From: Podarcis muralis
Taxonomy: Eukaryota
NCBI RefSeq assembly: GCF_964188315.1
Contig: NC_135668.1
Location: forward strand, 34,844,001 to 34,908,000
DNA length: 64,000 nucleotides
Direction: 5' to 3'
In this document: positions 12,589-14,732 of the stretch, in pieces
How positions within the stretch are numbered: the first letter of the stretch is position 1
Layout of the letters: each line of letters begins with the position of its first letter
The notes under the pieces: generated by a model
The model's database searches: none
Seen by the model: the letters and a program-made list of their open reading frames with translations, nothing else
Told to the model about the DNA's origin: nothing
Program-made: the position numbers and the translations under genes

Positions 12589-12686
12589 TTTGCTGGTGGA
12601 TGGTGACGCCTGAGACTTGCACTCTATGTGGGGGCCTCATGGGTAGGGTTAAGATCGTGATTTATACACTTAACCTTCAAGACTTG
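12589..12686. other. Duplicated ~95-bp element, copy 1 (function unknown)
   Basis: 37/44 identity with 14641-14684, then invariant GGTTAAGATCGTGATTTATACA (12647-12668); flanks unrelated. Confidence 0.85.
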
Positions 12687-12854
12687 CTTTCATCCAAGTT
12701 TGTGATGCAGTTCTCTAACAAACAAAAAGTGCACAAAAATGTGTATGGAAGGGGAAAGTGTGCATAAAAGTGCACATATTAGTGACAAGAATATACAAAA
12801 GACATGGTATTAAGGGGAATTGCATGCAAAAATGTGTATATTGCAAGAAATGTA

Positions 12855-13350
12855 CAGTGGTACCTTGGTTCTCAAACGCCTTGGTACTCAAACAACTTGG
12901 AACCCAAACACTGCAAAACCTTCCAGTTTGTGAAGTTTTTTTGGAAGTTGAATGTGCTCTGTTTTGAGTGTTATGCTTCTGATCTGAGTGCCACACTTCC
13001 GTTTTGAGTGTTACACTGACGTCTGTCTGTCTTTGCTATTTATTTTGCGTTTTTGTTTTTGCAGCTCTTTTTCTTTTCTTTTTGTGACTGTGTGGAACCC
13101 AGTTCAGCTACTGATTGATTGATTGTGTGACTGCAGTACATTGTTTATTGCTTTCGTTTTATGGATCAATGATCTCGTTAGATAGTAAAATTCATGTTAA
13201 ATTGCTGTTTTAGGGGTTGTTTTTAAAAGTCTGGAATGGATTATCCATTTTGCATGACTTTCTATGGGAAAGTGCGCCTTGGTTTTGGAACGCTTTGGTT
13301 TTGGAAAGGACTTCCGGAACGGATAACGTTTGAGAACCAAGGTACTGCAG
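12855..13350. mobile_element. Tc1/mariner-type (Tigger-like) MITE, family B
   Basis: TA-flanked; TIR cagtggtaccttggttctcaaac / gtttgagaaccaaggtactgcag. Confidence 0.85.
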
Positions 13351-14071
13351 TACACTAGAATGCTAATTGTCTTTGTGAGAACACACACACACACACACAC
13401 TGATACAGTAATGTGACCAACTGAATTTAAGATAGGGTAGAATAGAGACACCAAAACAGAAAGATTATTTCATCCTTATCCATGACACAGGGATACCTGC
13501 ATTGTACGAGCCATTGCTGTAAACTGTGTGTGCAATGTACTGACATCCCTGTCCATTAAATCAAATGGGTCTACTCTGAGTAGAACTATCATTGACTACA
13601 CCCCTGTGTTCTGTGATGAGTAGCTGCCTCAGGTTCAAGCTGTGAGGAAATGATCCTATTTTTGCTGGGAAAGGGACACCTTCGTGGAACTGGCTTATAT
13701 ACACTGACTTCCAAGATAGACCAAAAAAAAAAGTCACTGTATAAATGTAGACACCCAAAACTGACAAGTTAAAACACCCACCTTAGAAAGAAACCCACCA
13801 CTGCTTTTAATGACAGAGAGTTATTTTAAGGCCTTTATCTGCCTGTCATTTTGTCATTTATAAAGCGTTATCCCCTCATAAGAGACAAGCTGATGGCATT
13901 AAAATCAACAGAATTCTAGCATTAAATAATGATTGCCAACTTTTAAAAATAGATTGTGTGTGTGTGTTTTGGCAGCTGCATATGATATAAAAACTCATAT
14001 ATAGCTGTTAGGATGCTCCACCGCCCCCTCCCCACTTCTTAAAACTTGCTGAACTAAGGGGAGAAAGTTAC

Positions 14072-14121
14072 TTGCTCTCCAAGCCCTTGTTTCTGGTTCG
14101 CCTTATAGCAATCAAGGTAAC
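14072..14121 (-). other. Candidate 50-nt exon
   Basis: Acceptor tttattttccatttctctttttag|, donor caa|gtaact; two open frames (VTLIAIRRTRNKGLES or YLDCYKANQKQGLGEQ); protein not recognised. Confidence 0.25.
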
Positions 14122-14168
14122 CTAAAAAGAGAAATGGAAAATAAATTTGTTCTGTCTGTTTTTCGCAG

Positions 14169-14279
14169 TTGACTGTCCTGATCTGATGCTCCCGAACTTC
14201 CTTGCTGATGAGGACACAGGTCCCCTTTGTCTACTGTCTATTTCTCCAAGATCTGCAATGCATTTTCTGGGTGCGAAAA
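14169..14279 (+). CDS. Candidate 111-nt symmetric exon (DCPDLMLPNFLADEDTGPLCLLSISPRSAMHFLGAK)
   Basis: Acceptor tttgttctgtctgtttttcgcag|, donor aaaa|gtatgc; open in phase 1; protein not recognised. Confidence 0.2.
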
Positions 14280-14640
14280 GTATGCGCACAAAATTATTTT
14301 TTTAAAAATAGTCTTTTTTTAAAAAAAAGAAGTGTGTACAAAATATGCATTTTATGGATAATACAGAAAAATATATATTTAAAAGTACATATTCTATATT
14401 TTATAAAATGTTTGTCCAAGGAGTTTTTGTGCATACTTTCTTTCACACAGACATATCCACACAAAATGGAGTGGAGCATGTCACTGAGGACCAGAGAAAG
14501 AGACATGAGACAACATAAAAAAGGTAGCCAGGGATCCAGTGAATGAGAGAGCCAAGGGGCCCAAACCCTGAATAATCCCATCCTCTTACAGGTAGGTAAG
14601 TGTGGAAAAGAGAGGACAGGAAAACAACAAGGGGAATACC

Positions 14641-14732
14641 TTTGCAGGTGAAAGGTGACGTCTGAGACTTGTACTGTGTGTGGGACTTGTTGGCAAGGTT
14701 AAGATCGTGATTTATACAGTCTTCAGGTCTTG
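14641..14732. other. Duplicated ~95-bp element, copy 2 (function unknown)
   Basis: Invariant 22-mer at 14697-14718; see copy 1. Confidence 0.85.

What the first reader, a model, noticed from the sequence alone, without database searches (positions are those of the whole stretch)
12589..14732. Orphan ~95-bp element duplicated 2,050 bp apart, with an invariant 22-mer and unrelated flanks
Seen: 12589-12686 and 14641-14732 share a 44-nt left block (37/44 identical). A divergent spacer of different length (14 vs 12 nt) follows, then a perfectly identical GGTTAAGATCGTGATTTATACA (12647-12668, 14697-14718) and a short CTTCA..CTTG tail. Sequence on either side is unrelated, the spacer indel breaks any shared reading frame, and I recognise no transposon hallmark (TIR, TSD, tail). 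By eye, the left block can pair with the 22-mer on the + strand as an imperfect, G-U-rich hairpin in both copies. Established: conserved arms with a variable loop is the signature of paralogous pre-miRNAs and intronic small RNAs, and TGATTTAT is a Pbx-Hox site. Inference: either a tandem pair of unannotated structured small RNAs (I match it to no miRNA or snoRNA I know, and canonical C/D or H boxes are missing) or a duplicated Pbx/Hox enhancer module. The same TGATTTATACA 11-mer recurs at 52586-52596 (minus), which favours the enhancer reading.
Basis: partly seen in the sequence, partly recalled or inferred. Interest (0 to 1): 0.75.

Follow-up and report, generated by a model that had tools for sequence, protein, structure and literature searches.

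The report
Short local DNA duplicate, probably inert
Two look-alike stretches of about 100 bases, 2 kb apart in a lizard genome, are a real duplication found only at this spot, but they do not fold like small-RNA genes, gave no RNA reads, and no test shows them to be a gene switch, so the pair is most likely an old copying relic.

Summary
12584-12686 and 14636-14732 align at 79/103 positions (E 2e-16), with an identical 22-mer and flanks that cannot be aligned. No third copy turns up in the window, even with a profile search.

The small-RNA reading fails. Neither copy matches any Rfam family at E up to 10. Folding z-scores on all four strands run from -0.3 to -1.4, and MFEI is 0.52-0.54. The two copies fold differently, and the proposed pairing of the left block with the 22-mer is no better than shuffled sequence. 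One bulk RNA run and two RNA-like contig sets put zero reads on either copy.

It is not a young or mid-copy dispersed repeat. A same-species DNA run shows single-copy depth on both copies, against 10^4 to 2x10^6 on the transposon between them.

The enhancer reading could not be tested. TGATTTAT occurs at chance frequency in the window, the third 11-mer has no similarity around it, and no Meis/Prep site is shared. The 22-nt identical run is only marginally unusual (P=0.03), and both CpGs survive in both copies, which is a weak hint of constraint.

Two other orphan direct pairs lie in the same 64 kb.

My best reading is an old, small local duplication, probably neutral (0.45). A duplicated regulatory module remains possible (0.30). 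The decisive test, comparison with orthologous sequence from other lizards, was not possible with these tools.

The parts
12584..12686 (.). Copy 1 of the ~100-bp element
   Evidence: Aligns with 14636-14732 at 79/103. Single-copy depth in DNA run X1: bins read 124.5 and 156, and the one long contig there has depth 81.3. No RNA reads.
14636..14732 (.). Copy 2 of the ~100-bp element
   Evidence: Same alignment. Depth is 77.9-79.5, which equals the single 596-nt contig that covers it, so nothing else in that genome lays on it at 80% likeness or more. No RNA reads.
12647..12668 (.). Identical 22-mer in copy 1. It holds TGATTTAT on the + strand, TATAAA on the - strand, and one CpG.
   Evidence: Exact match; only two occurrences in the window at up to 3 mismatches. 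Run length P = 0.033.
14697..14718 (.). Identical 22-mer in copy 2
12604..12611 (.). TGACGCCT in copy 1: a CRE-like half-site (TGACG) that carries the second conserved CpG
   Evidence: Read. The motif reading rests on my own knowledge and was not tested.
14656..14663 (.). TGACGTCT in copy 2: a CRE-like site, 7 of 8 to TGACGTCA, carrying the same CpG
   Evidence: Read.
14602..14635 (+). Purine-rich tract directly upstream of copy 2. It looks like a polypurine tract and is the only feature that fits an LTR reading.
   Evidence: At least 29 of 33 purines. About 12 such tracts lie on the + strand in 64 kb, so adjacency by chance is about 1%.

Best explanation
The pair is a local duplication of a non-coding DNA segment of about 100 bp, found only at this locus. 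One copy was made about 1.3-2 kb from the other. It acts, if it acts at all, as DNA: it is not an RNA gene and not a member of a dispersed repeat family. I take the copying to have involved only these ~100 bp, for example a repair- or replication-templated insertion copied from nearby sequence. I take the two copies to have drifted apart since then, to about 0.21 substitutions per site, and to be probably without function. The transposon at 12853-13345 and other repeats inserted between them later. What is shown: the homology, its sharp edges, single-copy status, absence of a shared RNA fold and absence of RNA reads. What is inferred: the copying mechanism, the age and the lack of function.
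For: The homology is highly significant but confined to 103 columns with abrupt edges, and the unique flanks on both sides score no better than shuffles. At the observed divergence (18 mismatches in 97 aligned sites; Jukes-Cantor K about 0.21 by my calculation), neutral flanks copied in the same event would still align. So the simplest history is that only ~100 bp were copied. A same-species DNA run gives single-copy depth on both copies, against 14,000 to 2.3 million on the repeats in between. A profile search finds no further copy in 64 kb. Together these rule out two chance insertions of a common repeat. The same window holds two more orphan direct pairs, 69 nt each at 87% identity, 568 and 1,618 bp apart, so short local duplications are a recurring feature here and not a singular event. 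The mismatches show no coding or base-pairing pattern: stops occur in every shared frame (reading), and there are 0 compensatory pairs. No RNA is seen. No Rfam family matches. The ORFs in the interval between the copies give no Pfam match, and the one weak hit belongs to an ORF spanning copy 2 and falls below the family cut-off.
Against: Both CpGs are kept in both copies (12607/14659 and 12656/14706), giving 2 per 100 bp against 0.5-0.75 per 100 bp in the unique flanks, within a window whose CpG observed/expected ratio is mostly 0.1-0.3. Under neutral CpG decay I estimate this at P of roughly 0.03-0.12, using assumed rates. The 22-nt identical run is marginally longer than expected (P = 0.033). 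Both facts would fit constraint on a protein-binding core, or a gene-conversion tract. No mechanism-specific scar, such as junction microhomology or a target-site duplication, was found. Conservation in other species could not be examined at all.
Confidence: 0.45

Rival explanations
1. The pair is a duplicated cis-regulatory module, that is, a pair of similar enhancers or transcription-factor binding clusters. An older and larger duplication would have decayed everywhere except in ~100 bp held by selection. The 22-mer (a PBX:HOX-type TGATTTAT plus neighbouring bases) and the TGACG half-site would be the bound cores.
For: Sequence is kept in blocks while the spacer varies in both sequence and length. 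The 22-nt identical run has P = 0.033. Both CpGs are retained in both copies in CpG-poor surroundings. TGATTTAT is a documented PBX:HOX site (PMC6023610, PMC8707757). There is no transcription of its own, as expected for a DNA-level element in a tissue where it is silent. The window has no evident coding sequence. It has two masked or gap stretches whose flanks do not look like splice sites, which is compatible with a regulatory gene desert, but this is speculation.
Against: TGATTTAT occurs at chance frequency in the window, 5 against 3.7 expected. No Meis/Prep TGACAG site is shared, although such sites usually sit close to PBX:HOX sites (PMC6023610). Only copy 2 has CTGTCA, about 30 nt downstream. 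The third 11-mer is an isolated match. The statistical hints of constraint are weak and overlap each other. There are no data on conservation, chromatin or binding.
Confidence: 0.3
2. The pair is the two terminal direct repeats of an old, degraded, non-autonomous LTR-type retroelement about 2.1 kb long, or else two members of a very old low-copy mobile family.
For: The layout is repeat, interval, repeat in direct orientation, and a purine-rich tract abuts the downstream copy where a polypurine tract would lie (chance about 1%). A 10-nt inverted repeat lies just outside the pair, at 12578-12587 and 14743-14752 (read).
Against: No boundary choice gives TG...CA ends with a matching 4-6 nt target-site duplication, and no TGG-type primer-binding site follows copy 1 (read). 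The ORFs inside the interval have no Pfam match. The repeats would be unusually short for LTRs, with only about 20 nt left after the TATA-like motif. Depth in the genome is single-copy at 80% likeness or more, and no further copy appears in 64 kb by profile search. A family with pairwise identity near 77% should still put many members above 80%.
Confidence: 0.1
3. The pair is two paralogous small-RNA genes (miRNA-like or snoRNA-like), with the 22-mer as the mature or guide part.
For: The size is right, the cores are conserved around a variable middle, and the invariant stretch is 22 nt long. Copy 2 can form an 8+8 bp stem. The RNA libraries laid were bulk libraries and would miss small RNAs.
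Against: Folding z-scores are -0.39, -0.33, -1.38 and -0.54 on the core, and -0.71, -1.17, -0.77 and +0.24 with flanks. MFEI is 0.52-0.54, against roughly 0.85 or more for typical pre-miRNAs (the threshold is from my own knowledge). The minimum-energy folds of the two copies differ, and the consensus fold reaches only -10.6 kcal/mol with no compensatory change. The pairing of left block with 22-mer is no better than shuffles. No Rfam match appears at E up to 10. No C/D or H/ACA box layout is present. No tRNA-like gene is found.
Confidence: 0.05
4. The pair is two copies of a minus-strand core promoter plus the start of a first exon. TATAAA lies inside the 22-mer, and the left block would be the first ~50 nt of the transcript.
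For: A canonical TATAAA lies on the minus strand in both copies, with a CCCACA motif about 30-35 nt downstream and then a conserved ~45-nt block (read). Copy 2 ends that block with AAG|GTAT, a possible splice donor.
Against: There are zero reads on the blocks or on the unique sequence downstream of them on the minus strand, in one bulk RNA run and two RNA-like contig sets. Copy 1 has no GT donor. There is no CpG island. No homology extends downstream of the putative first exon.
Confidence: 0.05

Closest known systems
Small dispersed (non-tandem) local duplications or templated insertions produced by replication or repair (named from my own knowledge; no paper was read for this)
   Same: A short segment of about 100 bp is copied within a few kb, in direct orientation, with sharp edges, no target-site duplication, no tail and no terminal inverted repeats. 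Only one such pair exists in the genome. Other pairs of the same kind lie nearby.
   Different: No junction microhomology or other mechanism-specific scar could be shown. The CpG retention and the 22-nt identical run are slightly more than simple drift predicts.
Duplicated conserved non-coding elements, or shadow enhancers, carrying PBX:HOX sites
   Same: Two similar ~100-bp blocks lie close together, conserved sub-blocks flank a variable spacer, and a TGATTTAT motif is present (PMC6023610).
   Different: No cross-species conservation, accessibility or binding has been shown. The motif occurs at chance frequency, and no Meis/Prep half-site partner is shared.
Clustered paralogous pre-miRNAs
   Same: The length, spacing in kb, and an invariant stretch of about 22 nt.
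   Different: There is no stable hairpin, no shared fold, no family match and no reads.
LTR pairs of miniature non-autonomous LTR retrotransposons (TRIM-like)
   Same: Direct terminal repeats of about 100 bp surround an interval of non-coding sequence, and a purine tract precedes the 3' repeat.
   Different: There is no target-site duplication, no primer-binding site and no TG...CA ends, and the element is single-copy in the genome.

Membership tests
pre-miRNA | A single stable hairpin of about 60-80 nt in which the ~22-nt arm is mostly paired, folding clearly better than shuffled sequence | tested here: not met
   z-scores run from -0.3 to -1.4 on all strands. MFEI is 0.52-0.54. The duplex of left block with 22-mer is no better than shuffles.
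pre-miRNA | The same fold in paralogues, with compensatory changes | tested here: not met
   The minimum-energy folds of the two copies differ. The consensus fold gives -10.6 kcal/mol and 0 of 29 pairs are compensatory. With only two sequences this test has little power.
pre-miRNA | Small-RNA reads with a fixed 5' end and a partner-strand read with a 2-nt overhang | not testable with these tools
   Only bulk RNA and contig runs were on offer. They show zero depth, which says little about 22-nt RNAs.
Known RNA families (Rfam 15: miRNA, snoRNA, snRNA, tRNA and others) | A match to a covariance model | tested here: not met
   No hit overlaps either copy at E up to 10, either in 8 kb or in 171-nt slices. 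Nothing reaches the gathering score. ARAGORN finds no tRNA-like gene.
C/D or H/ACA snoRNA | Terminal C (RUGAUGA) and D (CUGA) boxes with a closing stem, or a hairpin-H-hairpin-ACA layout | tested here: not met
   Read. There are only degenerate C-like strings, and no D box lies near a 3' end on either strand. An ACA ends the 22-mer, but the element is too short and too unstructured to hold two hairpins.
Dispersed repeat / transposable element | Many copies in the genome | tested here: not met
   DNA run X1 gives depth 77.9-156 on the copies, against 1.4e4 to 2.3e6 on neighbouring repeats. Only two copies appear in 64 kb by BLAST and nhmmer.
Dispersed repeat / transposable element | Terminal inverted repeats, a target-site duplication, or an A-rich or microsatellite tail at each copy | tested here: not met
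   None is present at either copy.
LTR retroelement | Paired direct terminal repeats | tested here: met
   The two copies lie in direct orientation, 2,050 bp start to start.
LTR retroelement | TG...CA ends with a flanking 4-6 bp target-site duplication, and a primer-binding site after the 5' repeat | tested here: not met
   Possible boundaries were enumerated by eye. With TG at 12591 and CA at 12668 the flanks read ATATT and GTCTT. No TGG-type site follows copy 1.
LTR retroelement | A polypurine tract before the 3' repeat | tested here: inconclusive
   The purine tract at 14602-14635 abuts copy 2. Chance adjacency is about 1%, but this was noticed after the fact.
LTR retroelement | Remains of gag/pol in the interior | tested here: not met
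   The ORFs inside the interval have no Pfam match. The only hit (DUF5480, 15.9 bits, cut-off 25) is on an ORF spanning copy 2 and is below threshold.
PBX:HOX-responsive enhancer | A TGATNNAT site | tested here: met
   TGATTTAT lies at 12658 and 14708, but 5 occurrences in the window against 3.7 expected means the motif alone carries no weight.
PBX:HOX-responsive enhancer | A nearby Meis/Prep TGACAG site shared by the copies | tested here: not met
   Only copy 2 has CTGTCA (14749-14754). Copy 1 has none within 100 nt. The motif layout is taken from PMC6023610.
PBX:HOX-responsive enhancer | Orthologous conservation, open chromatin, transcription-factor occupancy, reporter activity | not testable with these tools
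   No vertebrate genome collection or chromatin data can be reached. Metagenome scans for both cores found nothing, and a protein-route attempt found nothing.
TATA-box core promoter (minus strand) | Transcripts starting about 30 nt downstream of the TATAAA | tested here: inconclusive
   There are zero reads in one bulk RNA run (about 12% of it read) and in two RNA-like contig sets. Other tissues were not tested.

The most novel reading that the evidence does not exclude
The two copies are a lineage-specific pair of redundant regulatory modules, in the manner of shadow enhancers. The 22-mer core (a PBX:HOX-type site with flanking bases and an unmethylated CpG) and the TGACG half-site would be held by selection in both copies, inside a gene-poor regulatory landscape.
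Probability: 0.25. Interest if true: 0.4.

Novelty: new member of a known kind. Interest (0 to 1): 0.2.

Why it matters
As it stands it matters little. It is one of several short local duplications in a gene-poor, transposon-rich stretch of a lizard genome. Its main value is as a worked negative: an invariant 22-mer between conserved arms looks like a microRNA pair by eye, yet it fails every structural test. If comparison with other squamates showed both copies under constraint, the pair would be a tidy natural example of a duplicated enhancer, with a variable spacer and two fixed cores, and it would be easy to dissect in reporter assays.

Tried and rejected
1. Known RNA families. Rfam was searched at E up to 10 on 8 kb, on two 171-nt slices, and at gathering score on the whole window, and ARAGORN was run. 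Nothing lies on the element.

2. Hairpin model. I tried single folds with shuffles, a consensus fold, the duplex of left block with 22-mer, and a scan for any single hairpin that pairs the 22-mer. None is above chance and none is shared between the copies.

3. Coding exon. Stops occur in every + frame at the start of copy 2. On the minus strand only copy 2 is open, and the 2-nt and 4-nt indels break any shared frame.

4. Larger hidden duplication. Smith-Waterman comparison of the flanks in both orientations, including the sequence beyond the transposon block, and diagonal k-mer counts found none.

5. More diverged copies in the window. An nhmmer profile search found none better than E = 10.

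6. Third copy at 52586. The alignment shows that only the 11-mer matches.

7. Dispersed repeat. Contigs of a same-species DNA run laid at 80% likeness or more show single-copy depth.

8. Expression. One raw bulk RNA run and two RNA-like contig sets give zero depth on the copies and on their unique flanks.

9. Orthologues by indirect routes, all blank: exact scans of metagenome contigs for the 22-mer and for the left-block core; exact look-up of seven ORFs around the copies; a homology search with the 102-aa ORF that spans copy 2; full-text search of papers for the core; the scan's own notes by words and by sequence.

10. LTR hallmarks and transposon ends, enumerated by eye. Only the purine tract fits.

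11. Exon search across the window. I counted 381 stop-to-stop ORFs of 55 aa or more after a complexity filter but did not scan them against Pfam, so as not to send very long lists of references. The gene context therefore stays unknown.

The N stretches were neither filled nor looked up.
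Full report
**Setting**

The scan's earlier notes identify this genome as a wall lizard; I did not verify that. 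The window is AT-leaning and strongly CpG-depleted, with an observed/expected ratio mostly 0.05-0.3. It is rich in repeats, and none of its long ORFs looks like a gene. It holds two N stretches. I left them alone and only looked at their flanks, which do not look like splice sites.

**The observation**

The repeat is real.
- The repeat finder gives two overlapping direct pairs, offset by 2,052 and 2,050 bp.
- A gapped alignment joins them into 12584-12686 against 14636-14732: 103 columns, 79 identical, 18 mismatches (10 transitions, 8 transversions) and two indels of 2 and 4 nt.
- BLAST within the window gives E 2e-16. The local score is 51, against 8.0 +/- 1.2 for shuffles.

The homology ends abruptly on both sides.
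- The 300 or 1000 nt upstream, the unique sequence downstream of copy 2 compared with everything after copy 1, and the reverse-complement combinations all score like shuffles.
- The single significant downstream hit is transposon-to-transposon (13269-13415 with 15455-15611).
- On the +2050 diagonal, shared 8-mers occur only inside the element.
- A profile built from the two copies finds nothing else in 64 kb better than E = 10.

**Is it a dispersed repeat?**

I laid the contigs of a same-species DNA run on 12200-15200 at 80% likeness or more.
- Copy 2 lies in bins of depth 77.9 and 79.5. That equals the depth of the single 596-nt contig covering 14299-14894.
- Copy 1 lies in bins of 124.5 and 156, over a 1,337-nt contig of depth 81.3. 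Similar small surpluses appear in the neighbouring unique bins, most simply from allelic contigs and the edge of the next repeat.
- By contrast, 12705-12805 reaches 14,057, the transposon at 12806-13411 reaches 0.27-2.3 million, and 13513-13613 reaches 30,010.

So repeats about 100 nt long are detected when they exist, and none lays on the element. Even so, a family whose members averaged about 77% pairwise identity over 100 nt should still put a sizeable fraction above 80%, so a family of hundreds or more is unlikely. A family of only a handful could not put two members 2 kb apart by chance. The pair therefore arose locally.

**Is it an RNA gene?**

No Rfam family touches either copy. This holds at E up to 10 in an 8-kb search, in two 171-nt searches where the filters are laxest, and at gathering score over the window. 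ARAGORN finds nothing.

Folding gives no support either.
- The 92-98-nt cores give z = -0.39 and -0.33 on the + strand, and -1.38 and -0.54 on the - strand.
- With flanks, z runs from -0.71 to +0.24.
- MFEI is 0.54 and 0.52, well under the ~0.85 typical of pre-miRNAs (my own knowledge).
- The two minimum-energy folds differ. Copy 1 forms three small local hairpins, one of them a GGTTAAG/CTTAACC stem that copy 2 lacks. Copy 2 forms an 8+8 bp stem around a large loop.
- The consensus fold reaches only -10.6 kcal/mol, with no compensatory pair.
Of shuffled left blocks, 71% and 24% do at least as well.

RNA evidence is also absent. One raw bulk RNA run (about 12% of it read, 12.8 million reads) and two RNA-like contig sets place reads only on the repeats. 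There are none on either copy or on the unique sequence around them. Bulk libraries would miss 22-nt RNAs, so this last point is weak. The structural failures are not.

**Is it coding?**

No. All three + frames hit a stop within the first 18 nt of copy 2. On the minus strand only copy 2 is open, and the indels destroy any shared frame. The ORFs inside the interval between the copies have no Pfam match. The only hit, on an ORF spanning copy 2, is below threshold.

**Is it an enhancer?**

TGATTTAT is a recognised PBX:HOX site (PMC6023610; TGATNNAT in PMC8707757). But it occurs five times in the window against 3.7 expected, and a third of shuffles do as well.

The third TGATTTATACA at 52586-52596 is real and by itself unexpected (0.03 expected), but nothing around it aligns with the element. 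It therefore adds nothing to the enhancer reading.

Prep/Meis TGACAG sites normally sit close to such motifs (PMC6023610). Only copy 2 has one (CTGTCA at 14749-14754), and it lies outside the shared block.

Two internal observations lean towards constraint.
- The 22-nt identical run is longer than expected when the alignment columns are permuted (P = 0.033).
- Both CpGs of the element are kept in both copies, at 2 per 100 bp against 0.5-0.75 in the unique flanks. Under assumed CpG decay rates of 5-10 times the average, I estimate P of roughly 0.03-0.12.

The two hints overlap, since one CpG lies inside the 22-mer. A short gene-conversion tract would explain the identical run equally well. I could not reach any other squamate genome. 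Metagenome scans for both cores were blank. ORFs around the copies are not in the protein collection, which closed the route to orthologous contigs.

**Other readings considered**

An LTR-like reading is prompted by the layout of repeat, interval, repeat and by a purine-rich tract that abuts copy 2 (14602-14635). About 12 such tracts lie on the + strand in 64 kb, so adjacency is a coincidence of about 1%. But I find no TG...CA ends with a matching target-site duplication, no primer-binding site and no coding remains, and the element is single-copy.

A minus-strand promoter reading rests on TATAAA within the 22-mer, CCCACA about 30-35 nt downstream, and then the conserved block. It has no transcripts to support it, and copy 1 has no splice donor.

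A 10-nt inverted repeat just outside the pair (12578-12587 and 14743-14752) has no target-site duplication. I take it to be chance.

**Context that lowers the prior for function**

A self-comparison of the whole window finds exactly three local pairs within 6 kb whose members match nothing else in the window, and all three are direct. They are the finding itself, 10896-10964 with 11464-11532, and 49244-49311 with 50862-50930. Short local duplications are thus recurrent here, at about one per 20 kb. That points to a mutational process, not to three separate functional modules. I did not check the copy number of the other two pairs in the genome.

**Verdict**

The small-RNA interpretation is not supported. 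The enhancer interpretation is untested, and the arguments offered for it are at chance level.

My best reading, at 0.45, is an old and small local duplication of about 100 bp. Jukes-Cantor K is about 0.21 by my calculation, which suggests tens of millions of years at usual reptile rates (an inference). The copies have drifted since, and later insertions, including the transposon at 12853-13345, have widened the gap between them. A duplicated regulatory module remains a live alternative at 0.30. Comparison with other lizard genomes would settle it.

Nothing here is surprising to a specialist, so interest is low.

Noticed in passing
window 10896-10964 and 11464-11532: A second orphan local direct pair: 69 nt, 87% identical, 568 bp apart, with no other match in the window. 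The second copy runs into a (CA)n tract.
   Followed up: partly
window 49244-49311 and 50862-50930: A third orphan local direct pair: 69 nt, 87% identical, 1,618 bp apart. It has a 23-nt identical run containing ATTGG/CCAAT-type boxes. The second copy abuts a repeat family that also occurs at 10550-10801 and 50116-50357.
   Followed up: partly
window 12853-13345: A miniature inverted-repeat transposon lies between the two copies. Its 28-nt terminal inverted repeats are 89% complementary and its ends read CAGTGGTACC... Summed contig depth reaches 2.3 million in a DNA run whose single-copy depth is about 80-110, and many RNA reads carry it. Read ends pile up at 12853 and 13345.
   Followed up: partly
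window 12696-12850, 14264-14443, 15045-15308: Units rich in GTGCACAAAA / TGCATGTAT, repeated at low to moderate copy number, lie next to both copies but in inconsistent positions and orientations. They are related to 48708-48755, 55793-55905, 44514-44634 and 59424-59506. They may be terminal parts of the element that another note places at 59587-61340.
   Followed up: partly
window 13513-13613: A short high-copy piece (depth about 30,000 in the DNA run) that is present in RNA reads, mostly on one strand.
   Followed up: no
window 12578-12587 and 14743-14752: A perfect 10-nt inverted repeat (ACAGTTATAT / ATATAACTGT) lies just outside the two copies. It has no target-site duplication and is probably chance, at roughly 1e-3 to 1e-2.
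   Followed up: partly
window 24166-24313 and 44109-44319: Two N stretches of 148 and 211 nt. Their flanks show no splice-site-like signals.
   Followed up: no
window 54380-54448 (+) and 44936-44996 (-): Two matches to the tRNA model above gathering score, at 39 and 32 bits. They could be tRNA genes or tRNA-derived SINE heads.
   Followed up: no
window 16628-16719: A long, near-perfect hairpin gives a weak mir-4484 hit (27 bits, gathering score 90). It is repeated at 32176-32231, so it is a repeat and not a microRNA gene.
   Followed up: no
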